Positions 1 through 56,744 of a DNA stretch of 64,000 nt are shown here, one piece after another (the stretch's first letter is position 1; each line of letters begins with the position of its first letter). This DNA is from Styela clava (lineage: Eukaryota): contig NC_135254.1 of NCBI RefSeq assembly GCF_964204865.1, positions 17,236,001-17,300,000 on the forward strand. The letters are read 5' to 3'. Both the position numbers and the translations under genes were made by a program. The notes under the pieces are model-generated. The model had not been told where the DNA came from. It made no database searches and saw only the letters and a list, made by a program, of their open reading frames with translations.

Positions 1-1316
1 TTGTAGAAACCTTCATATCAATAGCATATACCTCAAAGGTGCATTTTCTCCCAGTGAGCCGTTTGTTATGTGGTTCTTCAATTTATTACATATCTTCAGT
101 ATATTTGCTCGTTTTGTGAAACAACATATGTTACCAGCTATATAGCTATGTATACTTACAAGAATATGTGAAGAGACAAATGTCTGAAGAGTCAATATTT
201 ACAAAAAGCGATAAGTATCTCGAATAACCCTGAAAAAGTTGTATATATAGATATATATAATTACTAACTCTGGAGATAAAACGTTGAAATTAGTTTATTT
301 TCCTTGTGTGACATATAATGGTTGCTGATTTGAAACATAATAATGCAATTTTACGTTGCGACGTTGTATTGAAAAACTCATGTGCATAACATGATATCAT
401 AGTGACTCTGTGTACACTTTTGTAACCAAATATTAAATATTATCGGATATATGAATAAACAATTATTAATTATCCAGTTACGATTTTTATTCGTCGAGGG
501 GAATTCGACACTGAATTCTGTGATGTCAGGGTTCGGGTTAGCGAACGCGCGTTACTCAAAACATGGCGAGTGCTCTATCTACAGTGCTTAAAACGTGGCA
601 TGTGGTTTTTCCTCACGCCACACATTTTTTCACTAGTGACGAGGTTTTCTACAAAAGATCAGTGGGGTCATTGTCATATTGCACTTGAAACTAACATATT
701 TTTACAGTCTTTTTTTTCGAATTTGATTTCAGTCGTGATAGAGGAAACAGCGAATCGGGAATAAATCTGATATCACTAGATTGACCAATATAATCAGTAT
801 CATTTTTGACAACACCCGCAACACTTCGAAACTTTTAATTAGCTCAAGTTGTTTTTGTTGTTGAAGCTCTCTGAATTCGGATTAAGAAAATAGGTCAATT
901 CTTCAACACACATTGTTTGTTCTTAATTTGTCCTACTTGTCTTAGTGTAGTCAAACAACATCTGGAACATAATATGAGCTGCTTTTAAGCAGATAAATGA
1001 AGAAAACAGGGCAGATTCGGCAATATAATGGAACAATCTGGCATTGAGGAGACTTTTCTCGCCAAGTCCCAGTTTACAACGTTGAATGTGGTAGGTACTG
1101 ATTTGTAATTTATTTAAAACCATTTACTTAAACTTACAGTCAACTTTTCGCAATATTATAAACCTATTATGCGTTTGCTGCAACTTGTCTTGTATTCAAA
1201 TGTTCTTTTCATATTAATTATCTCTTTTTCGAAATAATATGTCAGAAAACTTCGTATATATACAATTAATGTGAGGCATAATCCAGTATTGGATATATCA
1301 GGAATATCAGGAAAAT

Positions 1317-2816
1317 ATGATGATAATCCGGCTCTTATTAATTTTCGTCGTGTTGCATGTTGTTCAAAGGTTAGTCTTAGTTAAAGTTGTATTTTATTAT
1401 ATATATAGAGAGTTTTTAATTCCTCAGAATTTATATACATGCAAACTATAGCAGGATGAGGGCCATGACTTATTCCATCGTTTCATATTCGGTACGATTA
1501 TTTCACAAAGACATGGGTATGTTTGTTGTTCAAAAGACGCGGCTGTCTTTAATCTTGCACTATGAGACTCGCAATTGACTTTTAATGATTCGGACAATAA
1601 TTCCTATGCTATTCATTTGAGTAAAGTCGATCAAATGTGAATTATTTCCAATTAACTTGTGTTTAGTAAAGTATATATACAAAAATATTTAGGTTATCAA
1701 AAAAATAATAGATAATGCAAATTCTATTCAATTCCCTAGTTAAAGATAATACATGGTGTCCATAAAATCCCTTCACAATTTCATTTTGTTTTGAAGTCAG
1801 TACTTAATATGTCTCAGCCAGGTATGTTGTTTTTTATTCAGTAATTGTGTAAGTATTTCCACTTCATTTAATACATCGGTGAAGGCCAAAACAATATATG
1901 ATATCGATAAATTGTACCTTGCCTTGTCATTCAGTTATCCGAGAGCAGCTTTGCCCAAATCGACACTAACACTTACAGCACTACGTAACGCCTCCTTTGG
2001 TTTTCCATTCACCAATTGCTGCAACGCTGTATAGGCCTTCCCAGGCGTCGTGTCTTTAAATGGCTTTATGATTTCTCCAACAGTGTTAATCCCTTCTTTG
2101 CAATTTTGAAAGGTTTTAACACTTCATGGACATTAGTTATATTAGGATATTAGTTATGCTATCCAAATAAACTTGATATGTAACATGTCATCTTACATTT
2201 AGTGCTCCGATGGAAGAGAACAGACCGGGTCCTCCCGCAGGTAATATGCCTAAATTTTATTTTTATCGATATTCAATTTTACAGATGTAATCTTGGAAAG
2301 AGCGCGTTGCGCCTAGCTGACATTGGTTTATCATGAGAAACATTACTAAAATACATTTAGGTTTGTACAAAGCAAGCGTTTTACCAGGAGTAAATTGAAT
2401 GCAAAAAAGACGCTGGAGTTGAATTATTTTTTTAATTTTTGGTTATAAATGTCTTTGTAACGATTTTTCGATATTCATTCGTATCCATTTGGTTTTAAAT
2501 ATTGCATCAAAAATAAAAAGTCTTTCCTATTTAAAAAAAAATCACAAACAAATAATTTTTTATAACAGAACTTCGAATTGACCTTGGCAAGAAACTTAGG
2601 GATTGGGGGGAAAAGGCTGTCAACTTCGGCAAAAAAACTTTCGAATTAGTCAAAGAAGGGATTAACACTGTTGGAGAAATCATAAAGCCATTTAAAGACA
2701 CGACGCCTGGGAAGGCCTATACAGCGTTGCAGCAATTGGTGAATGGAAAACCAAAGGAGGCGTTACGTAGTGCTGTAAGTGTTAGTGTCGATTTGGGCAA
2801 AGCTGCTCTCGGATAA
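1317..2816 (+). CDS. Secreted cationic amphipathic peptide precursor (antimicrobial-peptide-like), 112 aa; exons 1317-1369, 2203-2240, 2569-2816
   Basis: GT-AG introns with compatible phases (2, 1). The spliced protein is MMIIRLLLIFVVLHVVQS-APMEENRPGPPAELR-IDLGKKLRDWGEKAVNFGKKTFELVKEGINTVGEIIKPFKDTTPGKAYTALQQLVNGKPKEALRSAVSVSVDLGKAALG*. It has a hydrophobic signal peptide, a short pro-piece ending in R, a Lys-rich Cys-free helical region and a terminal Gly. Confidence 0.8.
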
Positions 2817-2836
2817 CTGAATGACAAGGCAAGGTA
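1915..2836. repeat. 186-bp inverted repeat: arm 1915-2100 is the reverse complement of 2651-2836 (550-bp spacer)
   Basis: By-eye comparison of taccttgccttgtcattcag...gttaatcccttctttg with caaagaagggattaac...ctgaatgacaaggcaaggta; no mismatch seen. Confidence 0.95.
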
Positions 2837-5217
2837 AATTATTTTACGATTTTTCCATTCTGAATTTTATTGTTACCGTTCCAGCTGTTCTATCATTGAA
2901 GGTGGTACAGCAAATCTATGTTCATCCATTCATAGCAAAAACAAAAATTGAACAGCTTAGAAAAGTTTTGCATACTGAAGTTATCAAAAAAGAACCTAAA
3001 CACGTGAATTAATTTTTTTTTAAAATTACAACAAATATTTATTATGAACGACACACAACAACAAGTCACAAAGCATGCAAATTTAAAAACCAGTTACTAT
3101 CCAGGTAACAAATAGGCAGCAGAAAAATTGCTTTTTTCTCGAATCATTTATCAAATTAATTTCAATAACTAAATTAAATACAATGCACTGTCTCCTGTGT
3201 CTTGAATTGTTGCTCCGAAGGAGTTCAACTTCGAACTTTTGTAATCCTTTATTATCAATCAACACGTGGATACCCAATGTTTTAAGTCTCCATGTAAGAC
3301 AGTCTAACGAAATATAATCCTAGATTGATAGAATTTACTTTGTATGTCTAACTAAAATATGATGTAGAAGCATCACCATTATGTCACTTAGTCCAACCCG
3401 AGTCCAATTAACTCTTGTTGCTAATCGCATTACTTGAGTACAATGCCTGACTGCTCTATATAGTATAGAGGCTTATTCTATTCCCATATCGTTAGCTTAG
3501 CAAATCCCATTTCCATGAGTATTCCTGTACAATGTTAATACACAATTCTTCCAATATGATCCTGTATCTTTTCTGGCAAACTTCGATTTATATCGCTGCC
3601 CCACTAGGCATATCACTGCTGGCTAATTCAATTCAAATGTGCAAAGATCGTTGATGTATTGAGTTTTTGTTAAATTGCAGATGACAGAAGACGACAGGAA
3701 AATCAAATTGAAACTGACGATGCAGGAACCACTTCCAACAATTTTTAATACTTATTTCTGTGTACGGCATTCATACGTCGCTAAGTGACAAAATAGAAAG
3801 CTAACTGTAATACCACTTGAAACGTGATTTCGCGACTTTTGGCTAGTGACTTTAGGAATAAAAATTACTGTGGGTGTATGAGTTTCGATGTATTCAATGG
3901 GCTTTTGCATTATATCAATTATGGGTTTTCTGTCTATTCTTGTAGCGGGTCAAATACCAAGTTTTTATACTACAACTAGACGTTAAAAATAAATGAGTTG
4001 TTTCGTGATCAAAACAAATTTTTAAACCGGTACGTTTTCCAAACAAATTACTTTCGAAGAATTCACATTTTTTTGCATTTGCACTTTTGCTGATATGACT
4101 TCAGTTTGTTTTTTTGCACCTTGTATAAACATAAAAAAAAAACAAATGTAATTTCCATGTAAATAAATCAAGTTAAAATAGTTTTCATTGTTTTCAGTTA
4201 TCGTGAACATGGAATATTTTAACGTAGCAAAATGTATAGTAAATGTTACCATAACTATCAGTAAAGGTTACGCGAGACTAACTCCCAATCCTTCCTCAAT
4301 GCCTTTCCACTAGAAGATCCATATGCGTATAATGCAAGGATGCTGTAGCTAAAAAAAAATACCATATATTGCAATTCAAGAGTCCTGCTGCACACTAATA
4401 CAAATGTATTTCTGAAACGTTCCGTCTGACCAAAATTCCGCCTGACCTCATGTAGACAAGCATTTTTTCTTCTGTGTGTCATGCAGCAGGAGTCTTGAAT
4501 TGCATAGAATTTTAACATAGGTGTTATTTGGTGAATTTTGAATGTAAAACTATTTTACTAATTCAATTGCGTGCTAATCGAAACGGAAGGGGCGTTGTTG
4601 ACTCCAAAGCGCTGGTGTAAAAGTACTAAGTTTAAATACCAAAACAATAAAGAAAATTGGTTATATTGTCATATATTGAAATCGTGGCGATGAGAATACA
4701 ATTGTAAGGGTGTTAACGGGACTGTGTCATAGTTTGGCATTTTACTCTGAAGTTGTGTTATATACTCCCGGGAGTCAAAATTCTGATCTTTCACCGAAAG
4801 CGAAGGAAACGAAGTCTATTGAGCGTGCTCAACAGTCTATCAATAGAGAATTGCATACACCACAGCCCTTTTGGTTAAGAAATTTGATGAAAGTATATAA
4901 CAGAACTAAGGATACTTATATCTGAGAAAGTTACCGGCGAGCACTCAAAATTTAAACATTCTGTTTTTTTTACATGGTCTTGACATATTATGTTCACTAA
5001 CGTATCTTCTAAATTCATACTGCTGTATTCTAATTATATCTACTTGTAGTCAGATTGCGCCTAATGTCATCGTGGCCAAAACCAGCCTGAAGCACGCTGT
5101 TTTAGTTTAGCGTGACGTTTTAGAACTGAATGTTCGCCATTACCATTCCAAAACGAAGGCCCAGGCCATCTTACTGCGTAATCATTACATCTTTAGTTCA
5201 TTACACTGTAATGAACT

Positions 5218-6139
5218 TGTAAGTTCGAAAATTGGCATTATCTTCTATCAATGGGGATTTCCCTAAAGTGAAACGACAAATGGAAAATTCCAGCTGTCCA
5301 CATATGTTGCAATCGACTCTCGCTGGACAAGTCTAATCTTGCCTCGCTCTCACGTGACTCGCTGCCGTGTTTGACGGCAGTCGTTGCTTAATATTCGCAT
5401 AGATTGCTTTTTATGTGTTAAGTTAGTTACGTTTAACGTCCGGTTGTAGGGATAATAATTGCCCATACCCAAGGCTTATGTTATTGGAACATATAACTGC
5501 TGTAACTTTTATTGTAGAATATTATATAAGCTATAAATAGACTGTAATTTGATTGATTGATTCTCTGAATCCTGAACTGAAATTGAAGTTATTTCTGAAT
5601 ATTTGTTATCGCCTGGCTTAAAACGTTTCGGTAAGTTTTAGTATTTGTTGTTTATGATAAGAATTCTTGTTATTAGTTCAAATAATATTCCAAATAATAA
5701 TAATTAATTGGTATTTAAATAGTATATAGTATTTCATGTTAATTAAATACTGTCAGTAGAGCTAGACAATGTCACATTGTTTAATGATTAAGTTTGCAAG
5801 TGCTTTAATGCATTATTGTTATTTTCTGTGGTCTGTATTTGAATATTTTCATTTAAATTCAGAAAACCGCTACGCTACACATCACCATACACATTGCATC
5901 ATTCTGTTATTAGTACGCTACACCTCTTTAACCTTATTCAACATTGTGAACTGTTTTACTGGATTTAATTCAATATATCAAATTTCATTGTACAACATTT
6001 GATATTTGTGGCATTGGAGGACACACTGAGAGTTGCGCGTTTTCGAATAGTTTTTCAAGAACCAAAGAACAGCCAGATATTTCAGTCACCCCCTTATGCG
6101 ACACCTGTATTTGCCAGGATACATAGAAAAGGTGTTACA
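5218..6139 (+). repeat. 5' LTR (922 bp)
   Basis: Starts TGTAAG and ends GTTACA; direct repeat of 12374-13295; the same 77-aa short ORF appears in both copies. Confidence 0.97.
5253..5291 (+). promoter_or_regulatory. kB-IRF-kB motif cluster in LTR U3 (second copy at 12409-12447)
   Basis: GGGGATTTCCC (5253-5263), AAAGTGAAAC (5265-5274) and GGAAAATTCC (5282-5291) match Rel/NF-kB and IRF consensus motifs; TATAAA at 5532-5537. Confidence 0.55.
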
Positions 6140-6162: not shown

Positions 6163-9100
6163 ATGAACTTGAGTTCGAGTGATGAAGATTACTCACCCAG
6201 AAAACTGGCTTTGAGGCAACTGGCTAACTATACAACAGCCGCTTGTCAGAAGATGCCATCACTGGCTGATGTCAAAAAACAACGTACAACATTAGAACAT
6301 TTATATTTCATGGCTGAAAAAGCAATTGCTGATCAGGATTTGCATGTGCTAAATTCTGTTATGTCAAGTATTGATGATCCTTTTGCCAAACTTGTGGAAA
6401 TGTACTCTGAGAGTATATCAGCTGCACCCAATGATGAAATAAGATTGAAATTCGAAAATGAACTTTGGAATGTGAATAAAGACATTGACAACCTTTTTGC
6501 TCGAGTACGTGAATTCACACATTTACAAAACCCCAAAACGTGGAGTTCAAATCAATGCAAAGATTCTGAACTTCCCGATTCCAGAAGAGAAAGAGCGGAA
6601 AGTGAAGTCGTGTCCTTGTCTGGTAGCATACGAAGTAAACGCTCTTATGCGAGTAGCAAGACATCAATATGCAGCAAAGGGTCTGTACATATGGCCAAGG
6701 CACAAGTTAAGCGTGAAAGAGCTCGAATTGCATTGCAAAGAACAGAAGCAAAGCAGAGAATTGAAGATGAAAAACGCAAAATTGAACATGAAAATCAAAT
6801 ATTGGAAGCAAAATTTGATTTGCAAGAAGCAGAAGCAGAGGCTGCTGTTTGGGAGAATTTGTCTGTGGTTGATGATGCTGGAAGTTCTCGGTCTTCATCA
6901 GATATATTCATCAGATCTGGTGTTCAAAAGGAAGCTACAGCTGTAGTAACTTCGCGGACTGTAGAACACGAACAACAACCTGAGAGAAACGTTACTAATC
7001 AACAGGTGGTAAGTCAATCATCTCCTATCGCTACAACTAAACCTGCTGTTTCACCTAAACAAGATGTGGTGTCTTCAAGCAATGATGACAGCGTGAATTC
7101 TGGATTTTCCCAACAGTCCGCTGATTTTGCACTGAACACAGATTCAAATAATGAACATAATATATCTAAACCTTTGGTCACTGACACTGATAAATTTGCT
7201 CAGAGTATAGCCAGAGCTTTTGGTGAAGCCATGCATGCTCCAAAGTTGGAATATTTGACATTTTCTGGTAATCCTATTGACTACTATATTTTCAAGAAAA
7301 ATTTTGAAACTAATATTGATGCTAAAGCACCCACAGATGCCTTGAAATTAGCTTTCTTACTGCATCAATGCAAAGGAAAAGCGAAATCGCTCATACAACA
7401 CTGTTCTATATTTGAACCAGAAGTGGGTTATGCCAAGGCTAAAGATATTCTTCATAAGAAATTTGGAGATTCAGATGTTGTAACTGAAGCTTTTAAAGAA
7501 CAGTTGCATCGTTGTTCGATTATAAAACCAGATGATCATGCAGCACTGCAAGACTATGCTCTTTTAATGAGAAAATGTGTTCTTGTGCTCGGTAAGCTTG
7601 ATAGCCTTGGAGAAATGAATACATCTGATCGTATTATCGATTTTGCCAGTAAGTTACCATACAGCTCACAGAAAGGATGGGAAAGGAAAGCTGTGAAGAT
7701 CAAAAATAATACTGGTAAAAAGGCTCAGATATGGGACTTGGCTGATTTCATTGAAGAGGAAGCTGATATTGCAGGTTCAAATACTGCGAAATCATTGAAC
7801 ATCAGAAGACGTGAAGATAAGCCACAACAAAAACGGCAATCAACACGAAAGTCTACAACTTATACTGTGAAAACTGAGGATGTCAAAGCAACTTCTCATG
7901 TCCAGAGTCCTGCTATTTTAAAATGTAAGTGTTGTTCCTTTTCCCACCTTTTGTCAAAATGTGAAAAGTTTAATTCTAAATCGATTGAAGAACGAGTAAA
8001 ATTCCTGAAAGAAATTGGTTTCTGCTTCAATTGTCTACGTGGAGGTCACTTGGTAAAGGACTGCAAGTCACAATATACATGCTCTGTTAAAGGGTGTGGA
8101 CGAAGACATCATACTTTGTTGCATTTAAATACAAAGAAATTAGAAAATGAAGAAAATGCAAACTTCAAAAAGAATGATGACAAACAAAGCTCAATTCAGA
8201 AGAATGTGACTACTGCAGTTCAAGCTAATTCAAATGCATGCAAGAGCTCCATGTATACTTACAGAAATATTTTGCCTGTCAGGATTCGAGCAAATAACGT
8301 TGAAGTGGAAACATATGCTCTGGTCGATATTGGGTCCGACACAACTTTTTGTGAAACAAGCTTAATTGAAGAACTTGGTTTGACTGGAAAACAAAGAACT
8401 GTTGAAATCAACACATTAGGACAACGACCAGTCATGCATGATGGTGTTGTTGTAAATCTCACTGTTGCATCAATTGACGATGCAGAAGAAATATTCATTG
8501 AAAATGTGATGTCTATTGACAAGATTCCAGTTCAACCAAATCCTATTCCATCTGAAGAAGAACTCAAGCTACTTCCTCATCTGCAAGAACTTAATCTACG
8601 TAAAATTAAAAATAAATATGTTTCTCTGCTTATTGGAACTGATTGTCCATATGCACATCATGTGTTGGAAGTTCGAACTGGAAACAAGAAGCAGCCATTT
8701 GCACAAAAGTCTCCATTGGGATGGTCGATTATTGGACCATCAGTGAATATGCCATCAACGCACAAGATTCATGTCAACTTTGTGAAGTCTGATATGTTAC
8801 TCGAAGAAGAGATAAGAAGAACATGGTGCACTGATTTTGAAGATGAGATTGGAGATTTGACATTTCCAACCTCGAAAGAAGATAGACATGTTCTAAATTT
8901 TCTGAAGAGCTCTGTAGAGCATTTCGATGGTCATTTCACAATACCTTTACCTTGGCGTCCTGGGACACAGCTGCCGAGCGGAAGTCGTGCATTGGCTGAA
9001 CGCAGATTGGAGTATCTCCATAAACGTTTGTCTAAAAATGATGATTTGAGAGAGAAATACACAGAAAAAATGCAGGAATATATTACAAAAGGTTTTGCGA

Positions 9101-12100
9101 AAAAGCTTTCGCAAGAAGAAGATATCCCTGCAGGTCCTGTTTGGTATTTGTGCCACCACCCGGTGTGTACCGCAAACAAACCGAAAGTGCGTATCGTATT
9201 TGATTGTGCTGCAATTTATAAAGGTGTTTCTCTTAATGACACTCTCATGCCTGGACCAGACTTGGTGTCAAGCCTTATTGGTGTGTTGACTCAATTTCGT
9301 AAGGGACGCATAGCTTTAGTTGCTGATATTGAAGCTATGTTTCATCAAATTAAAGTTAAGAAAGAAGATTGCAATGCTCTGCGATTTCTTTGGTGGCCAA
9401 ATGGTGATATTTTAAAGAAGGCAGAATTATATTTCATGGAACGTCATATATTTGGAGCTTGCAGTTCACCTTGCATTGCTTCATTCTGCTTGAAGGAAAC
9501 CGGAAAACGATTTGGTCATGAATTTGATAAAAGAATTTGTGAGATTATTGAAAATGGATTTTATGTAGATGACTGTCTTACATCTTCTGATAGTGATGAA
9601 GATGCAATAAACACAAAAACACAACTTTGTAATTTGATGAAGAAGGGAGGTTTCAATCTAACGAAGTGGATTTCAAATAGTTCCACTGTGATGGCCAATA
9701 TCCCAGAATCTGAACATACCAAATCTGTGAAAGAGTTGGATTTGCATGAACCTCGAAAAGAGCGTGTTCTTGGAGTTTTCTGGAATGTAGATGCCGATGC
9801 TTTTCAATTTCGTTCAACTGTACCTAAGTTGAAGACATATACAAGAAGGACAATTTTATCTGCAGTTAATTCACTATTTGATCCCCTGGGAATGCTCGCT
9901 CCCGTGATTCTGGTAGCAAAAATGTTGCAACAAGAAATCATCGAAAAAGGTTTCGGCTGGGATGAAGTAATTACAGAAGACAATATTAAAGACTGGGACA
10001 CTTGGTTCAAACAGCTCACTGATCTTGAATATATTTCGATTCCAAGATGTTTCAAGCCACAAGAATTTGGAAATATCAAACATTGTGAGATACACCATTT
10101 TTCAGATGCTTCTAGCTTCGGTTATGGTGTAGTTTCGTATTTGAGGCTGGTCGATGAAAATAATCAAATACACTGCTCATTTTTATGTGGTAAAGCAAAG
10201 GTGGCTCCTCCGAGGGCTGAAAGCATTCCTAGACTAGAACTTGTTGCTGCTGTGCTAGCTGTAAAGGCAGATAAGTGGCTACGATTAAAGTTGAATTATT
10301 CCGATTGTGAGTCCGTATTTTGGACTGATTCGAGTGCAGTGCGTCAAAGCATATGTAATCCAAGAAAACGTTTTCGTACCTTCGTTGCAAATAGATTGGC
10401 CAAGATTCATCGACAGTCAAAGCCGTCTCAATGGCGACAAGTGCCTTCAAAAATCAATCCGGCTGATGACGCATCACGAGGCTTATCATTGAAAACTCTC
10501 ATCAATAAAAGTCGTTGGCTGCTTGCACCTGAATTTTTATGGAAGACCGAAGATAGTTGGCCAAGAAATTCTGAAGATAAAACGGACCTGCCTGATGAAT
10601 TTCAGCCAATTGAAAGAAAGAAAGTGGCAACAATTATTGCTTCGGATATTGACACAATTGACAACTTCATTAAAAGCTTTTCTGATTTACAAAGGCTCAA
10701 GATTGCCACTGCATGGGTGTTACGCTATAAAAGTTTCCTTCGTAACCACAATTCTGTTACCACAAGAAATATAACTGTGGAAGAAATGCAATACGCAGAG
10801 CAAGCACTTGTGAAATATGTTCAGCAGCAGAATTACAAATCTGTCATTGATAATTTATCAGACAAAAGTGAAATTGGTGACAGGAAGGCTCGTCACGAGA
10901 TGAAGAAAGCTGAGCATACAAAGTCAATTGCAAAACTAGATCCAATTATAACTGATGGAATTCTACGGATTGGGGGGAGGTTGGATAAAGCTCCTATTTC
11001 ATTCGAAATGCGACATCCCATCATTTTACCAAATGATCACCACTTAACCAGATTAATCATTGACTTCTATCACAAAAAAGTTGGACATTCAAGTGTTTCT
11101 CATACTTGGAATGTTATTCGTGAAAAATACTGGATCACAAGACCGAGAGCAACAATTCGGCATGAATTAAATAAATGTGTGACCTGCAGAAAAGCTAACA
11201 CACGACAAGGAGAACAGTTAATGGCTGAACTGCCATCTGCTCGTCTAAAGGTTGGTCAACCACCATTCTATTCAACAGGAATCGACTTCTTCGGCCCATA
11301 TTTGATCAAACGTGGGAGAAGTGAAATCAAAAGATATGGCTGCATATTTACATGCCTCACAACAAGAGCTGTACATATTGAACTGGCAGAAGATTTATCC
11401 ACTGATGCTTTCATAAATGCTCTTAGGAGGTTTATGGCAAGAAGATCAAAACCTTTTGAATTGCACAGTGACAATGGAACTAATTTTGTTGGAGCAGAAC
11501 GAATATTACGAGAAGAAATGCATAAGCTCGATCATACCAAATTAGATGGATTCTTCAAAAAACAAGAAATCCGCTGGTATTTCAATACTCCAACAGCCAG
11601 CAACCAAGGAGGTTCCTGGGAAATTTTAATTCGATCCATAAGAAGAATTTTGAACAAGATATTTTACAAATCTCCTGTTGTATCTCAAGATGTTCTGCAT
11701 ACTGCACTCCTGGAGGCAGAATACATAATCAATTCAAGACCTTTGTGTCCAGTTTCTTTTGATCCAAGAGATAATGCACCATTATCTCCAAATCATCTAC
11801 TTCTGCAAAAACCAACACCATGTATTTCACCTGGATTATTCAATAATCAAGATTCCTATAGTCGTCTACAGTGGCGTCGAGTTCAACTTCTTGCTGACGA
11901 GTTCTGGAGGAGATTCTGCAAAGAATATTTGCCAACCATAGCCATTCGTCAAAAATGGCCGGACAAGACAAGAAACTTCACTGTTGGGGACATAGTACTT
12001 GTGGTAAACAACAGTGTACCAAGGGGCAAATGGGACGAATTGTCAACACATATCCGGATCGATTTGACATAGTTCGTAATGTAGATGTCAAAACTCAATG

Positions 12101-12373: not shown

Positions 12374-13295
12374 TGTAAGTTCGAAAATTGGCATTATCTT
12401 CTATCAATGGGGATTTCCCTAAAGTGAAACGACAAATGGAAAATTCCAGCTGTCCACATATGTTGCAATCGACTCTCGCTGGACAAGTCTAATCTTGCCT
12501 CGCTCTCACGTGACTCGCTGCCGTGTTTGACGGCAGTCGTTGCTTAATATTCGCATAGATTGCTTTTTATGTGTTAAGTTAGTTACGTTTAACGTCCGGT
12601 TGTAGGGATAATAATTGCCCATACCCAAGGCTTATGTTATTGGAACATATAACTGCTGTAACTTTTATTGTAGAATATTATATAAGCTATAAATAGACTG
12701 TAATTTGATTGATTGATTCTCTGAATCCTGAACTGAAATTGAAGTTATTTCTGAATATTTGTTATCGCCTGGCTTAAAACGTTTCGGTAAGTTTTAGTAT
12801 TTGTTGTTTATGATAAGAATTCTTGTTATTAGTTCAAATAATATTCCAAATAATAATAATTAATTGGTATTTAAATAGTATATAGTATTTCATGTTAATT
12901 AAATACTGTCAGTAGAGCTAGACAATGTCACATTGTTTAATGATTAAGTTTGCAAGTGCTTTAATGCATTATTGTTATTTTCTGTGGTCTGTATTTGAAT
13001 ATTTTCATTTAAATTCAGAAAACCGCTACGCTACACATCACCATACACATTGCATCATTCTGTTATTAGTACGCTACACCTCTTTAACCTTATTCAACAT
13101 TGTGAACTGTTTTACTGGATTTAATTCAATATATCAAATTTCATTGTACAACATTTGATATTTGTGGCATTGGAGGACACACTGAGAGTTGCGCGTTTTC
13201 GAATAGTTTTTCAAGAACCAAAGAACAGCCAGATATTTCAGTCACCCCCTTATGCGACACCTGTATTTGCCAGGATACATAGAAAAGGTGTTACA
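12374..13295 (+). repeat. 3' LTR (922 bp)
   Basis: Follows the polypurine tract; no difference from the 5' LTR seen by eye. Confidence 0.97.
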
Positions 13296-37800: not shown

Positions 37801-40800
37801 TCTTAGAATTGATCTCGCTCGCCTTATTTTGGATATTTACATTTCTTTATGCTTTAGGGATTGCGATTCCATCCACGTATTTTCAACATGTTTTTTGAAT
37901 GAATCATACTTTCGCCTTAATATCTGTTATCTGTAGCTTATTGCTGGAACCACCGTTCCAGGTTATTAAAATATTCCATATCGAATAAATAGCCTGACAC
38001 AATAATAATAGATAGGTCTATTTAAAGAAGAAGAAAAAACAATTTTAACATTTTTCCTTCACAAAGTTTCAAATGTAAATGATTTCAAGTACTCGGTAAG
38101 CTACATCTGTATATTTGTCTTCAATGCTTTACTGCTATACTGAAATGAAAGTTCTTATGTTTAACGATTTTTATAGCTCGTGTTGCGAAACAAAGAGCAG
38201 ACAGAAACACCATGGCGAAGTCAACCATAAAATCAACAAATGAGAAGGTATTGTAACTTTAATGGCGTCTTTTTTTCTAAAAAATGTAAGAAATCAGAAT
38301 AAGACGGAATGTCGGAGATTAATTAAAAATATTCAACAAAAATTTTTTTTTAAATTCAATTTTATCTAATTTTATGAAGTTTATTTTAGCCTATACAATA
38401 ATTTTTGGATTTTTTTTCATGCTTGACAAATTTATTATCCATTAATTGAATTACACCGAGATAATTTCAAAATATTGTAACGGTCTTACTTGGGTATATG
38501 TAGTATACTGGAAATCATTTCTGTATCGGGTATATTGCGAACATCTAATATACCACAGCTATAGCTGGTATTCAGAATGATTGTCTTAGGTGCACAGGTT
38601 ATTTAACAGTTTCCTATTTACTAAGCATCCTTCCTTGTCTTGCGGGTACAGGATCTCATCATACTATGACACAGGAAGTTTTATAATATGAATGTTCATT
38701 CATAATTGTATCTATTATTCAAGCTTGGTTTATATAAAATTCACACCCAGGAATTGCCAAAATGAATTAATCTGCGATCCTGAAAATATAGAGTATCCAG
38801 AAAGTCTTGAAAAAAAACAATTGCAAAGGGAATTTATCAATACCTTTTATTGTTTTGGCCCTCACAGATGTATTGAATGAAGTAAAAATACTTAAACAAT
38901 TACTGATTAAAAAACAACAAACCTGGTTAAGATATATTAGGAACTGACTTTATAACAATATTGAAATTGTAAAAGGACTTTATGTGGCCCCTTTATTATG
39001 GAAATGGAATATCGCATATTTTTCAATATTTGACAAATTCCCAACATTCACGATGCTGATTCTATATTTTATTTTCGTAATAGAACGACCTTACTTCAAG
39101 TATATCTCCTATCATGAGGGGTGAGATGAAGATGCCAACATCTTGGCCTCAACCCTGCGAACAACCTCATGTTCAAGACCAATCTCCCGCGCTCAATGAG
39201 ACCGAAACCATCAGGTATGAGGGAGTGATCGTATGATTGCCAATATACTATTATACTTAACTAACAATAACTTTTTTCATTTCTGAAATAAGATTTAAAA
39301 TCTATTTCAAATGAAGGGGATATCATATGACATCTTTTCATTTATCTCAGTGGAAATGAAAGCCAATTAGACAGCCTAATCGTACAGTCAGACATGAGAA
39401 TTTTTTCCAATTAATCGTTTCAAATTCGTAAATAAATTATTAGATGGTAGAGGAAGCAATAAGTGAACAGATGTCCTATCCAGATGATCCAACCCATACA
39501 GCAGGGAGTACTGCAATCTTTGCACACATATCCTTTCCTTGCAGAAGTCGCCTATTTAGTTCCACAGACAGTAAAATTCAGAACTAGACTGGATAGGATT
39601 TACAAATTTATCCCAGGGGAGAGGAGGGAAGGTGATAAGTCGGCTTAATCATATGGCTGACCACCGCCTCTCGTACGGTTACCAGTCCTTGCCGAGTATG
39701 GGATTAATTGACCAGGTATTTGTTTCCAGATTCATGCGTGGTAACAGTTGAATGGTCAAATGCTAATATATACATGAATTTGTAGTTATGCTTTGTTCGG
39801 TTATAATTAAATCAAACTCTGAACAATCGGCAATGGATTTTGAAAGCCACATAAAATGTATAGTTGAATTCTAAAACTTTATTTAAACTTTTAAAAAATA
39901 TATAGATCTTGGAAAGCAATTATGAGCTCTGGTAAATAATATAACAGTTTCAATTGTTAGGATTTACCATATCTATGATTTTTAACCAGATACAAATAGT
40001 TATAATATATCATACCTCACAGGGTTCATTCAGACACATGGAAATACCCTTGCTGTTATAAGTTGTTTTCTAGTCATTGTCATCTGTTTATTATTTTAAT
40101 ATCTTATTTGATTTTTGTTTGTAGAGTCAATGATGATTTAACTCAATGGGCCAAACGATATTCTGTTGACAGACAAGAGAAAGCACAAAAGAAAGCCCAA
40201 ACCAAAAAGGTGACTTTTCTAATTCTAACTATGATTGATTTAATTCTGAATAACGCCATAGTATTTGATCTCATATTTTGTCTTTTCCTCAAGAAAATTG
40301 TTACTTTGAATCATTTTTGGCATAATAAAATTTTGATTAAATTTCACTGTAAATGTTTTTAAGGTAATCAATTTTAATCAATTTTTCTTTCTATATTCCT
40401 TGTTCCCTTGCAGATACATGTTATATTTATTGCAGCTAACTTCTAGTAAATTGTACTGTCATTATTATTATCACCTAACATTATTCTTACCTTCTAGCTG
40501 GTGGAGAAAAAAGTTAGAAATACCAAATCACCATCTTCTAGATATGACGACTTTGAAAAGTAAGTAGAGTGTCCTTTGAGAAATGTACTGCCTGCTTGTC
40601 ATGATTTCCATGTATGTTGTTTAGTTTTTATTCTGCATTCTGCATTTTCGAACCAAACATGGCCACTGATTTGTACCACTCTTCAATGCTCTGAAATCTT
40701 TCCAGTTGGACATGGCCGACAGTGGGATTTTGACTCGAAATATTGAAACTGCAGTGCCTATATAAGTATTTCAATTCTCGTCAACCACAGGCAATCATTC

Positions 40801-54252: not shown

Positions 54253-55164
54253 ATGGATTCCGATGAAGAGCGGGGAGAATCTGTGTTGGAAATGGCATTT
54301 AGCTTGATTAAAAATGGATTTGGTGGTTCGTACCAGAGAACAAATCCTAAACGCATTCACGCCCAAGATTTGATCATGCCTAATGCCTCAGGATGTAGTC
54401 CTATAAGCAACTCGGAAACCTTACCAAAAGACGAACTTGTTGCTCGAACAACAGGGAGTACTTCGTTAAATGGAAATACTGTAATTTCTCAGCAGGAATC
54501 TAATTCTAGTATGCCTTTCGCTAGGCATGTTGCTGAAAATGTTTACAATATGCCTACATCACCTTATATGCAAGAAATGATGCCTTACGATAGGCATGTT
54601 GCTGAAAATGTTTACAATATGCCCACATTACCTTATATGAAAGAGATGATGGGATACAATGGAGAAGTGTCTCTTGAAGACAACAATGCACAACTCATGA
54701 ATAACAAGTTAACTTCTGTTTTTCTAACATATGGCGACGAAGCATCTATACCATCGGTTATTGAGATTTATAAGTTTCTGAAACAAAACCTAGTTGAACC
54801 TCACGTAGACTTTATGGAGCAATCTATCAGGAACTGCAACAAAAATGTTTGGGCTAACGATAGAATAAGAGAATCTTCATTTATTATTGTCTGTGTTAAT
54901 GCAAACTACAATCAAATAGTTAATAAGTGCATGGCGACAGCTGACAATGATGATGCTAGTTATGCAGCTTATACCTTTAATGCACTTCAATCCATGTTTA
55001 TCCACAATGGTTGTTTGAATTACAAAGTCATACCAGTTTTGATTGATGGTGCAGTATTTAGTAGCTTGCCACTGTGTTTTCAAAGTACAGATGTCTATAG
55101 ATGGCCTGACAAAAGGGTTGAATTACTGGACAGAATTTTCAAAAACTTTTCTAAACATATTTAA
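54253..55164 (+). CDS. SEFIR-domain protein, Act1/CIKS (TRAF3IP2)-like, 303 aa with a low-complexity N-terminus
   Basis: VFLTY...FLKQN...HVDFME...W...FIIVCVN.NY...MFIHNGCLNYKVIPVL...LP..FQSTDVYRWP...LL.RI parallels the Act1 SEFIR boxes (VFITY, IDIFE, EFIKQGSMNFRFIPVL, VYSWP). Confidence 0.88.
   Translation: MDSDEERGESVLEMAFSLIKNGFGGSYQRTNPKRIHAQDLIMPNASGCSPISNSETLPKDELVARTTGSTSLNGNTVISQQESNSSMPFARHVAENVYNMPTSPYMQEMMPYDRHVAENVYNMPTLPYMKEMMGYNGEVSLEDNNAQLMNNKLTSVFLTYGDEASIPSVIEIYKFLKQNLVEPHVDFMEQSIRNCNKNVWANDRIRESSFIIVCVNANYNQIVNKCMATADNDDASYAAYTFNALQSMFIHNGCLNYKVIPVLIDGAVFSSLPLCFQSTDVYRWPDKRVELLDRIFKNFSKHI
54511..54648 (+). repeat. In-frame coding tandem duplication, 2 x 69 bp (23 aa)
   Basis: MPFARHVAENVYNMPTSPYMQEM / MPYDRHVAENVYNMPTLPYMKEM. 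Confidence 0.92.
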
Positions 55165-56228: not shown

Positions 56229-56744
56229 ATGCCATCACTATTTCTCACTTACGGTCCACATGATGAGAGGACCGTAGAAAAGGTAAAAGAAATTCACGAC
56301 TATCTCCGTACCGAACAGTCTATCCATTGCCATGTTGACTACAAAGACTTGAGAACCAGAAGCATGAACGTCAACATGTGGATAAATGACAATTTGGGGC
56401 GAGACTTTGTGTTGGTGGGCATTGGTAAAGGTTATACAGAATACACATGTAGCTATCTAAGCACAGATGATACTGATGACCCAAATAGAAGTTATAATGG
56501 GTCAATATTTGACAGACTGCAGTCGGAAATTATTCATAATGGTTGTTGGAATAAACGCTATATTCCTATATTATTGGACGGTGCTACAGATGATGATCTT
56601 CCAAGTATTTTGCGAACTACAACATTGTATCATTGGCCGAAAGACCAGCAAAAGCTACTGGACAGATTATTAGGAAGACAAGAATTTAAACCGCCTCTCA
56701 GAGGATCAAGGCCTATAGCCGTTGTCAAGTCTGTTCTCGGTTAA
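56229..56744 (+). CDS. SEFIR-only protein, Act1/CIKS-like, 171 aa
   Basis: LFLTYG...HVDY...MW...FVLVGI...EIIHNGCWNKRYIPILL...LYHWPKD...LLDRLLGRQEFKPPLRG matches the Act1 C-terminus (LLRLLREEEYVAPPRG); clear paralog of the SEFIR domain in 54253-55164. Confidence 0.88.
   Translation: MPSLFLTYGPHDERTVEKVKEIHDYLRTEQSIHCHVDYKDLRTRSMNVNMWINDNLGRDFVLVGIGKGYTEYTCSYLSTDDTDDPNRSYNGSIFDRLQSEIIHNGCWNKRYIPILLDGATDDDLPSILRTTTLYHWPKDQQKLLDRLLGRQEFKPPLRGSRPIAVVKSVLG

What the first reader, a model, noticed from the sequence alone, without database searches (positions are those of the whole stretch)
1317..2816. Hidden gene for a secreted, cationic, probably C-amidated helical peptide (candidate new antimicrobial peptide family)
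Seen: three short exons, none in the ORF track, splice in frame to a 112-aa precursor. It has an 18-aa signal peptide, a 15-aa pro-piece ending ELR and a 79-aa Cys-free region with 12 K, 2 R, 4 D and 5 E (net +5 by hand count). Helical periodicity (LGKKLRDWGEKAVNFGKKTFELVKEGINTVGEII) is broken by PFKDTTPG and GKPK, DLGK occurs at both ends, and the last residue is Gly. Established: a signal / short pro / cationic helix / amidating Gly layout is typical of cecropin-like and tunicate styelin/clavanin precursors. Inference: this is a host-defence peptide. I do not recognise the sequence as a known family.
Basis: partly seen in the sequence, partly recalled or inferred. Interest (0 to 1): 0.8.

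Follow-up and report, generated by a model that had tools for sequence, protein, structure and literature searches.

The report
Orphan secreted helical peptide gene, Styela
A real, spliced gene found only in the sea squirt Styela clava encodes a small secreted, lysine-rich helical peptide that could be a new antimicrobial peptide, but nothing yet shows what it does.

Summary
All three exons translate as described. Both splice joints (1369>2203, 2240>2569, GT..AG) stand in contigs of three RNA-type runs and in none of the DNA run. The joined product equals RefSeq XP_077968976.1, "uncharacterized protein LOC144422891 isoform X1" of Styela clava, 112 aa. So the gene is annotated but unnamed, not hidden.

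New here: exon 3 ends at 2833, and a fourth, non-coding exon starts at 3681.

The gene is single-copy. It has no relative among 1.84 billion representative proteins, no Pfam family and no known fold.

The product has a signal-like N-terminus and a Cys-free, net +5, strongly amphipathic three-helix region.

Antimicrobial function is plausible but unproven. Charge density is low, and the charge layout on helix 1 resembles lipid-binding class A helices. Neither the pro-piece cut nor the amidation could be tested.

The four itemised coding variants are all amino-acid changes.

The exon's 186-bp antisense copy in intron 1 is perfect, lies inside a high-copy repeat, and is absent from another sample's alleles.

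The scan noted other, unrelated AMP-like genes elsewhere in this genome.

The parts
1086..1090 (+). End (ATGTG) of an alternative upstream first exon used by RefSeq isoform X2 (96 aa, begins MC, no signal peptide). A GT donor lies at 1091-1092. The exon's start is unknown.
   Evidence: P0001 sequence read against the window. No RNA contig lies on 1001-1240 in X1, X5 or X7, so this isoform has no support here.
1244..1369 (+). Exon 1: a 5' leader (contigs start at 1244-1280) with a minimal uORF, ATG-TGA, at 1269-1274. CDS 1317-1369 encodes the signal-like MMIIRLLLIFVVLHVVQ plus the first 2 bases of S18.
   Evidence: (records 1, 17, 18).
1370..2202 (+). Intron 1 (GT..AG, phase 2).
   Evidence: Joint in X1, X5 and X7, none in DNA run X15.
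1748..1913 (.). Copy of a high-copy interspersed repeat inside intron 1. The repeat resumes at about 2096-2120.
   Evidence: 1,863 first-look candidates, 40 scored at 84-88% identity; another copy at 38831-38984.
1914..2099 (-). Perfect 186-bp antisense copy of 2651-2836 (the last 183 nt of exon 3 plus GTA of the intron), inserted in the repeat copy. It has no Met and no start of its own. Weak similarity extends to 1910-2117.
   Evidence: Other repeat copies and two X1 alleles of this locus lack it.
2203..2240 (+). Exon 2, 38 nt: completes S18, encodes APMEENRPGPPA and gives the first base of E31.
2241..2568 (+). Intron 2 (GT..AG, phase 1).
2569..2833 (+). Exon 3: residues 31-112, the amphipathic Lys-rich region, with stop TAA at 2814-2816 and 17 nt of 3'UTR. 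Coding variants seen in RNA contigs: 2601 D42N, 2607 G44R, 2656 E60G, 2765 L96F.
2834..3680 (+). Intron 3, in the 3'UTR, 17 nt after the stop.
   Evidence: Contigs of X5 and X7 leave the window sequence at 2833 and go on with 30 letters identical to 3681-3710.
3681..4024 (+). Exon 4 (3'UTR). The end is inferred from the 344 further letters of the X5 contig and an AATAAA at 3988.
   Evidence: The end is an inference.

Best explanation
This is LOC144422891 of the ascidian Styela clava. It is a single-copy, four-exon, transcribed gene with no detectable relatives.

Shown:
- The splicing and the open frame.
- The identity with RefSeq isoform X1.
- The absence of homologues and paralogues.
- The composition, and the strong helical amphipathicity.

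Inferred:
- The 112-aa product enters the secretory pathway and loses an 18-residue signal peptide (VQS|AP).
- It is released as a Cys-free, Lys-rich polypeptide of 94 residues, or 79 if the N-terminal Pro-rich piece is trimmed.
- It has one long amphipathic helix and two shorter ones, which fold back on each other in solution.

Most likely mechanism (about 0.4): a host-defence peptide. Its amphipathic helices open onto anionic microbial membranes and disturb them. The segment 36-55 (net +4) makes first contact, and the Ala/Val/Ser-rich C-terminal helix inserts. The C-terminal Gly may be converted to an amide.
For: Gene and product:
- Spliced contigs in three RNA-type runs, none in the DNA run. 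In X1, exon contigs have word depths in the thousands against 8-74 for intron contigs of the same run (the tool warns that depth is a poor measure).
- RefSeq has the same CDS.
- P(112 open codons) is about 6.6e-4.
- Only one locus in the 377-Mb genome.

Peptide character:
- 12 K, 2 R, 4 D, 5 E, no Cys, net +5.
- Mean hydrophobic moment above 2000 of 2000 shuffles.
- The AF2 single-sequence model has pLDDT 79.4 with helices 3-41, 45-57 and 61-80 of the exon-3 product.
- 4 of 77 18-residue windows meet the hydrophobicity, moment and charge thresholds of the published Ciona linear cationic helical AMP (LCAMP) screen (thresholds read in the methods section of PMC7387483).
- The last residue is Gly.

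Context:
- S. clava haemocytes make helical AMPs, the styelins and clavanins (introduction of PMC9966394).
- The gene is taxonomically restricted.
- Its four itemised coding variants are all non-synonymous, and three raise the charge: D42N, G44R, E60G.
- The C-terminal helix shares the hexapeptide ALRSAV, and 9 of 18 positions by eye, with Ciona Ci-PAP-A (Table 3 of PMC7387483).
Against: - No activity, tissue or induction data.
- Charge density is +0.043 (94 aa) to +0.063 (79 aa), with 9 acidic residues. That is low for lytic peptides.
- Helix 1 has Lys/Arg at a mean of 123 degrees and Asp/Glu at 153 degrees from the hydrophobic moment, with Gly on the apolar face. This is the class A, lipid-associating pattern rather than an all-basic polar face.
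- There is no anionic pro-region of the kind that nearly all Ciona LCAMP precursors carry (discussion passage of PMC7387483).
- The precursor is 112 aa, outside that screen's 50-100 aa range.
- No paralogue cluster.
- None of the 7 GGGRNWYYCC matches in the window lies in 1-1316.
- The ALRSAV match is a recalled lead, checked only by eye. It sits at the opposite end of the precursor from its place in Ciona, and my rough estimate puts it at chance level if all known AMPs are the search space.
- Four variants are too few to show selection. Two further differences in each of the X5 and X7 exon-3 pieces are not itemised by the tool.
Confidence: 0.4

Rival explanations
1. A secreted class A amphipathic protein that coats or carries lipid or hydrophobic surfaces, working like a small exchangeable apolipoprotein. 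It would be soluble as a folded-back helical hairpin and open onto lipid, tunic or particle surfaces without lysing them.
For: - Charge layout on helix 1: basic residues at the interface, acidic residues at the centre of the polar face.
- Mixed charges and low net charge density.
- About 8.5-10 kDa, Cys-free and all-helical.
- Abundant mRNA in one sample set.
- Its only sequence look-alikes among solved structures are idealised designed helical proteins.
Against: - No Pfam apolipoprotein family at E<=1.
- The best self-similarity lags are 7 and 14, not 11 or 22, and they are weak (115 of 2000 shuffles reach them).
- No fold match above the chance level for helical models.
- A class A pattern also fits ordinary salt-bridged soluble helices.
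Confidence: 0.2
2. A small soluble three-helix secreted protein with another extracellular role, such as a ligand, a reproductive or larval secretion, or a tunic component. Here the amphipathicity only serves to build its own hydrophobic core.
For: - AF2 predicts helices that pack back on each other, with TPR-like helix-turn-helix matches at Z up to 8.0.
- Heptad-like spacing of Gly 37, 44 and 51, with the best self-similarity lags at 7 and 14.
- Matches to designed helical bundles.
Against: - pTM is only 0.45, so the packing is uncertain.
- The fold matches are within the range the tool gives as chance for helical models.
- No conserved relatives exist, as many ligands have.
Confidence: 0.2
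3. The transcript is real, but the product has no selected function: a young, possibly de novo, lineage-specific gene drifting neutrally.
For: - No homologue anywhere and no paralogue.
- The exon differs between samples about as much as the introns do: 3-5 differences in 268 nt of exon against 8 in 385 nt and 4 in 539 nt of intron.
- All 4 itemised coding variants are non-synonymous.
- The reference haplotype tolerates a 186-bp antisense insertion in intron 1.
Against: - A 112-codon frame kept open across two splice joints (P about 6.6e-4).
- A well-formed signal-like N-terminus.
- Amphipathic periodicity beyond 2000 of 2000 shuffles.
- Very high exon depth in X1 relative to its own introns.
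- Fast evolution is equally expected of immune effectors.
Confidence: 0.13
4. A prohormone or neuropeptide-type precursor cut at its two Gly-Lys-Lys sites (37-39 and 51-53). With the terminal Gly, this would give three amidated peptides.
For: - Two GKK motifs; 220 of 20,000 shuffles have two or more.
- The terminal Gly.
- GKK as an amidation and dibasic cleavage signal is established knowledge (recalled).
Against: - The GKK motifs sit 14 residues apart inside one predicted continuous helix and look like part of its repeat pattern.
- The three products would be unrelated to each other and to any known peptide.
- There are no acidic spacers.
Confidence: 0.07

Closest known systems
Ciona linear cationic alpha-helical AMPs (Ci-PAP-A, Ci-MAM-A, KH.S908.1; PMC7387483, passages and methods section read)
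   Same: - A tunicate secreted precursor with a signal peptide and a Cys-free cationic amphipathic helix.
- 4 of 77 windows pass that paper's HeliQuest-type thresholds.
- ALRSAV is shared with the start of Ci-PAP-A, and AALG with the end of the KH.S908.1 peptide (by eye).
   Different: - The Ciona precursors run signal, then cationic helix (about 20-30 aa), then anionic pro-region. Here a short Pro-rich piece (net -1) comes first, the 79-aa basic region runs to the stop, and there is no anionic tail.
- 112 aa exceeds that screen's 50-100 aa limit.
- Charge density is much lower.
- No similarity was detectable by HMMER.
- I could not align the Ciona sequences with a tool, because sequences from papers may not be typed into calls.
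Styelins and clavanins of Styela clava (introduction of PMC9966394 read; precursor layouts recalled only)
   Same: Same species. Helical, cationic and secreted by haemocytes. C-terminal amidation is known for these peptides (recalled).
   Different: - They are 32 and 23 residues, Phe-rich or His-rich (PMC9966394).
- No match turned up in the genome-wide search with exon 3 or in the protein libraries.
- No direct alignment was made.
Insect cecropins (Pfam PF00272)
   Same: A basic amphipathic N-terminal helix with a Trp, a Gly/Pro hinge, a more hydrophobic Ala/Val-rich C-terminal helix, and a precursor ending in Gly. The cecropin layout is recalled.
   Different: No Pfam hit at E<=1. The peptide is twice as long, has many acidic residues and has three helices.
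Small exchangeable apolipoproteins (class A amphipathic helices; recalled)
   Same: A secreted, Cys-free helical protein of about 8-10 kDa, with basic residues at the polar/apolar border and acidic residues at the centre of the polar face.
   Different: No sequence or Pfam relation. No clear 11/22-mer repeat.

Membership tests
Cecropin family (PF00272) | Match to the family profile | tested here: not met
   Pfam scan of the exon-3 product found 0 families at E<=1.
Linear cationic alpha-helical AMP precursors as screened in PMC7387483 | N-terminal signal peptide | tested here: inconclusive
   By hand rules only: R5, a hydrophobic core at 6-16, and V at -3 and S at -1 before A19. No SignalP tool was available.
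Linear cationic alpha-helical AMP precursors as screened in PMC7387483 | An 18-residue window with hydrophobicity 0-0.6, moment 0.1-1.0, net charge +3 to +10 and no Cys | tested here: met
   4 of 77 windows pass. The best is 36-53, with moment 0.58 and charge +4.
Linear cationic alpha-helical AMP precursors as screened in PMC7387483 | Precursor of 50-100 residues with an anionic helical pro-region after the cationic helix | tested here: not met
   The precursor is 112 aa. The only non-basic piece (19-33) is net -1 and lies before the basic region, not after it.
Linear cationic alpha-helical AMP precursors as screened in PMC7387483 | Antimicrobial activity of the mature peptide | not testable with these tools
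   Needs synthesis and MIC assays.
Styelin / clavanin families of S. clava | Sequence similarity of precursor or mature peptide | tested here: inconclusive
   The exon-3 product matches only itself and its antisense copy in the whole genome, and only itself in the protein libraries. No direct alignment with styelin or clavanin sequences was made.
Exchangeable apolipoprotein-like class A helices | Basic residues at the interface and acidic residues at the centre of the polar face | tested here: met
   On helix 1, K/R lie at a mean of 123 degrees and D/E at 153 degrees from the moment.
Exchangeable apolipoprotein-like class A helices | Tandem 11/22-residue repeats, or a profile match to apolipoprotein families | tested here: not met
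   The best self-similarity lags are 7 and 14, reached by 115 of 2000 shuffles. No Pfam family.
Amidated peptide precursors | A C-terminal Gly exposed for the amidating enzyme, and the amide found on the peptide | not testable with these tools
   Gly112 directly precedes TAA. The amide itself needs mass spectrometry.

The most novel reading that the evidence does not exclude
This is the founding member of a new family of unusually long (79-94 aa), Cys-free, three-helix host-defence polypeptides specific to Styela. Standing alleles differ by up to three charges (+5 to +8). In some haplotypes a 186-bp antisense copy of the coding exon in intron 1 folds the pre-mRNA into a perfect hairpin, which could feed RNA interference or editing and so tune or silence the gene.
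Probability: 0.15. Interest if true: 0.65.

Novelty: new member of a known kind. Interest (0 to 1): 0.4.

Why it matters
S. clava is the source of the styelins and clavanins. A further, unrelated and much longer secreted amphipathic peptide would widen the known repertoire of tunicate effectors and give a salt-adapted template for study.

It is also a clean example of an orphan gene with strong transcript support. The reference haplotype carries a very recent self-antisense insertion, so expression of the two kinds of allele could be compared.

If it turns out to be a lipid-binding or structural protein, or a functionless young gene, it is ordinary.

Tried and rejected
Homology searches, all with the exon-3 product, found nothing real:
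- The search for homologous proteins found only RefSeq's own entry, 1 of 2 candidates.
- phmmer over 1.84 billion representatives found itself plus two long repeat proteins. One is a SpaA-domain adhesin. Both score only by summing short repeats and I rejected them as spurious.
- Pfam gave 0 families.
- The ESM Atlas best score was 0.83, which is chance level.
- PDB sequences gave only designed helical proteins, E from 8.6e-4 to 0.33.
- Foldseek against the PDB gave 0 matches at E<=0.001.
- VIA-align wide gave TPR-like hairpins at Z<=8.0, within the tool's stated chance range for helical models.

Paralogues: the exon-3 protein and the 5' region of the gene each match only this locus in the 377-Mb genome.

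Literature:
- A 17-residue string of the peptide gave 0 papers.
- The locus and protein accessions gave 0 papers.
- The S. clava AMP listings cover styelins, clavanins and a clavanin derivative, Cla-H, only (listings; passages of PMC13604612).
- Supplements were closed and were not asked for. They could hold expression tables that name this gene.

Promoter: none of the 7 GGGRNWYYCC matches in the window lies upstream of the gene.

Assembly artefact as the cause of the inverted repeat is rejected:
- Short-read DNA contigs of X15 cross both inner junctions (records 13 and 14).
- X15 may, however, be the assembled individual.

A retro-copy origin of the antisense piece is rejected: it carries 3 to 7 intron bases beyond the donor.

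RNA editing as the cause of A>G at 2656 is unlikely. In X7 it stands in the same contig as G>A and G>C changes.

The joined step was left out. I searched the model exon by exon: exon 3 was searched, while exons 1 and 2 (17 and 12 codons) were only translated.
Full report
**What is there**

The window is AT-rich animal DNA (GC 0.30-0.39). It lies at C5:17,236,001-17,300,000 of a 377-Mb assembly. The exon-3 product is 100% identical to an NCBI protein of Styela clava, so this is the club tunicate.

Searches used exon 3 alone. Exons 1 and 2 are 17 and 12 codons and were only translated.

**Transcript evidence**

The look-up of sequencing runs listed 18 runs holding part of 2569-3060. None is on record as RNA; 14 are guessed to be RNA. 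I laid X1, X5 and X7 (RNA by guess) and X15 (DNA-like, 0.98 of the words) on 1001-3400.

- All three RNA-type runs carry contigs that skip 1370-2202 and 2241-2568 with GT..AG ends. X15 has 0 such contigs.
- Single contigs of X5 (737 nt) and X7 (852 nt) run exon 1, exon 2 and exon 3 without a break.
- In X1 the exon contigs have word depths of about 4,500-31,800, against 8-74 for contigs on introns. The tool warns that contig depth is a poor measure of expression. I use it only to say that the spliced form far outweighs the unspliced form.
- A processed DNA copy cannot explain the joints, because the genome holds no other copy of exon 3.

New anatomy: the X5 and X7 contigs leave the window sequence at 2833 and continue with 30 letters that equal 3681-3710. 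So exon 3 ends at the donor AAG|GTAAAT, 17 nt after the stop, and a 3'UTR exon begins at 3681. Its end, near the AATAAA at 3988, is inferred.

Contigs begin at 1244-1280. The leader holds one ATG-TGA mini-uORF at 1269.

RefSeq isoform X2 (96 aa, begins MC, no signal peptide) needs an upstream exon ending ATGTG|GT at 1090. No RNA contig lies on 1001-1240 in the three runs.

**Is it coding?**

- Background stop frequency in the window, with the retroelement and this gene left out, is 0.063 per codon. That gives about 6.6e-4 for 112 open codons.
- The N-terminus has one Arg, an 11-residue hydrophobic core and V-Q-S before A19, which fits the -3/-1 rule. This is a hand rule; no predictor was available.
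- Residues 34-112 have 12 K, 2 R, 4 D, 5 E, no Cys or His, net +5.
- The mean 18-residue hydrophobic moment (0.418) was reached by 0 of 2000 shuffles. The maximum (0.632) was reached by 20 of 2000.
- AlphaFold2 without an alignment gives pLDDT 79.4 and pTM 0.45. It predicts helices at 3-41, 45-57 and 61-80 of the exon-3 product, which are precursor residues 34-72, 76-88 and 92-111.

**No relatives**

- The word-indexed search of 5.8 billion proteins found only RefSeq's own entry, 1 of 2 candidates.
- phmmer over 1.84 billion representatives found itself and two proteins of more than 2,000 residues. These score by summing many short repeat matches, and one is a SpaA-domain adhesin. I take both as spurious.
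- Pfam gave 0 families at E<=1.
- The Atlas best score was 0.83, a chance level.
- PDB sequences gave only de novo designed helical proteins.
- Foldseek gave 0 matches at E<=0.001.
- VIA-align gave TPR-like hairpins at Z<=8.0, which the tool itself rates as common for helical models.
- In the genome, exon 3 matches only itself and its own antisense fragment, and the 5' region only itself.
- A 17-residue string and the accessions occur in 0 papers of the library.

**What it may do**

Pointing toward a linear helical antimicrobial peptide:
- The general layout: signal peptide, Cys-free Lys-rich amphipathic helices, terminal Gly.
- The species, whose haemocytes make styelins and clavanins (introduction of PMC9966394).
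- The gene's restriction to this lineage.
- 4 of 77 windows pass the hydrophobicity, moment and charge thresholds of the Ciona LCAMP screen.

Pointing away from a classical lytic peptide:
- Net charge is only +4 over 94 residues or +5 over 79, with nine acidic residues.
- On helix 1, Lys/Arg lie near the polar/apolar border (mean 123 degrees from the moment) and Asp/Glu at the centre of the polar face (153 degrees). Five Gly sit on the apolar face. This is the class A pattern of lipid-associating helices, and it also occurs in ordinary salt-bridged soluble helices.
- There is no anionic pro-region. A discussion passage of PMC7387483 says almost all Ciona candidates have one, placed after the cationic helix.
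- The proposed cut after ELR has no recognised site.
- Two GKK motifs at 37-39 and 51-53 are more than chance gives (220 of 20,000 shuffles). If used as cleavage and amidation sites, they would remove most of the charge. They lie 14 residues apart inside one predicted helix, so I read them as part of its repeat pattern. A prohormone reading stays open at low odds.
- No kappaB-like motif lies in the 1.3 kb upstream. All 7 window matches are elsewhere, 6 of them in the two LTRs of the neighbouring retroelement.

One further lead. The C-terminal helix shares ALRSAV, and 9 of 18 positions by eye, with Ci-PAP-A of Ciona (Table 3 of PMC7387483). I first recalled this and then checked it in the paper. 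I could not align it with a tool, and the motif lies at the opposite end of the precursor. A hexapeptide of common residues is expected by chance if all known AMPs are the search space (my rough estimate, not a tool result). It is a lead, not homology.

**Variation**

- RNA contigs show four itemised differences in the coding part of exon 3: 2601 G>A, 2607 G>C, 2656 A>G and 2765 A>T. None is in DNA run X15.
- They give D42N, G44R, E60G and L96F, so all four are non-synonymous.
- The first three stand together in the X7 contig and raise the charge by 3.
- Four of four is not significant against the roughly three in four expected by chance.
- The pieces of X5 and X7 have 3 and 5 differences, of which the tool itemises only 1 and 3.
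- Exon and intron differ between samples at a similar rate: 3-5 differences in 268 nt of exon, against 8 in 385 nt and 4 in 539 nt of intron.
- This fits either a fast-evolving effector or weak constraint.

**The antisense copy**

- 2651-2836 (the last 183 nt of exon 3 plus GTA) recurs, perfectly and inverted, at 2099-1914 in intron 1. Exon 2 lies in the 551-nt loop.
- The pre-mRNA is predicted to fold into this stem: -482.6 kcal/mol, z about -33, from 20 shuffles.
- The copy has no Met and no frame of its own beyond the fragment.
- It lies inside a copy of a high-copy repeat, with 1,863 first-look candidates of which 40 were scored at 84-88% identity.
- Other copies of that repeat pass from about 1913 straight to about 2096 (DNA joints; the copy at 38.8 kb).
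- Short similarities at both borders suggest a microhomology-guided event. This is my reading.
- In X1, the two contigs that cover 2094/2097-2202 both skip the insert. They end at the exon-2 border, and they lie on sequence that is unique in the genome.
- Their depths, 51.5 and 26, add up to the whole depth there, 77.6. So the animals of X1 appear to lack the insert.
- It is therefore a very recent presence/absence polymorphism of the reference haplotype, not a fixed part of the gene. This is an inference from contigs.
- X15 supports both inner junctions but may be the assembled individual.

**Verdict**

- That it is secreted, helical and amphipathic is well supported.
- That it is an antimicrobial peptide is the leading reading, at about 0.4.
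- The rivals are a class A lipid- or surface-binding protein (0.2), another soluble helical secreted protein (0.2), a functionless young gene (0.13) and a prohormone (0.07).
- The tissue and condition of the expressing samples could not be learned.
- Earlier notes of this scan describe other AMP-like gene families elsewhere in this genome. The genome-wide search shows they are not sequence relatives of this exon.

Noticed in passing
window 1914-2099 (with 2651-2836): A perfect 186-bp antisense copy of the coding exon sits in intron 1, inside a repeat copy. Two X1 alleles of this same unique intron lack it, so it looks like a recent presence/absence polymorphism rather than a fixed regulatory hairpin.
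   Followed up: partly
window 1748-1913 and about 2096-2120; also 38831-38984: An interspersed repeat family of about 165+ bp has at least 1,863 first-look candidates in the genome, with the 39 scored copies elsewhere at 84-88% identity. The type of element was not determined.
   Followed up: partly
window 1269-1274: A minimal upstream ORF (ATG directly followed by TGA) lies in the 5' leader, 48 nt before the main start.
   Followed up: no
window 1086-1092: RefSeq isoform X2 starts in an upstream exon (ATGTG|GT) and would lack the signal peptide. No RNA contig of the three runs laid covers that exon.
   Followed up: partly
window 5253-5263 and 12409-12419, flanking ORF 6163-12072: An uninterrupted 1,969-aa ORF, which I read by eye as a retrotransposon gag-pol polyprotein (no family search), lies between two direct copies of the same kappaB-like decamer cluster, which I take as its LTRs. 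It starts about 1.2 kb after the inferred 3' end of the peptide gene. I observed it only.
   Followed up: no
window 54253-55164 and 56229-56744: Two neighbouring ORFs each carry a SEFIR domain (Pfam E 8.1e-08 and 8.4e-09), as in IL-17-receptor/Act1-type adaptors.
   Followed up: partly
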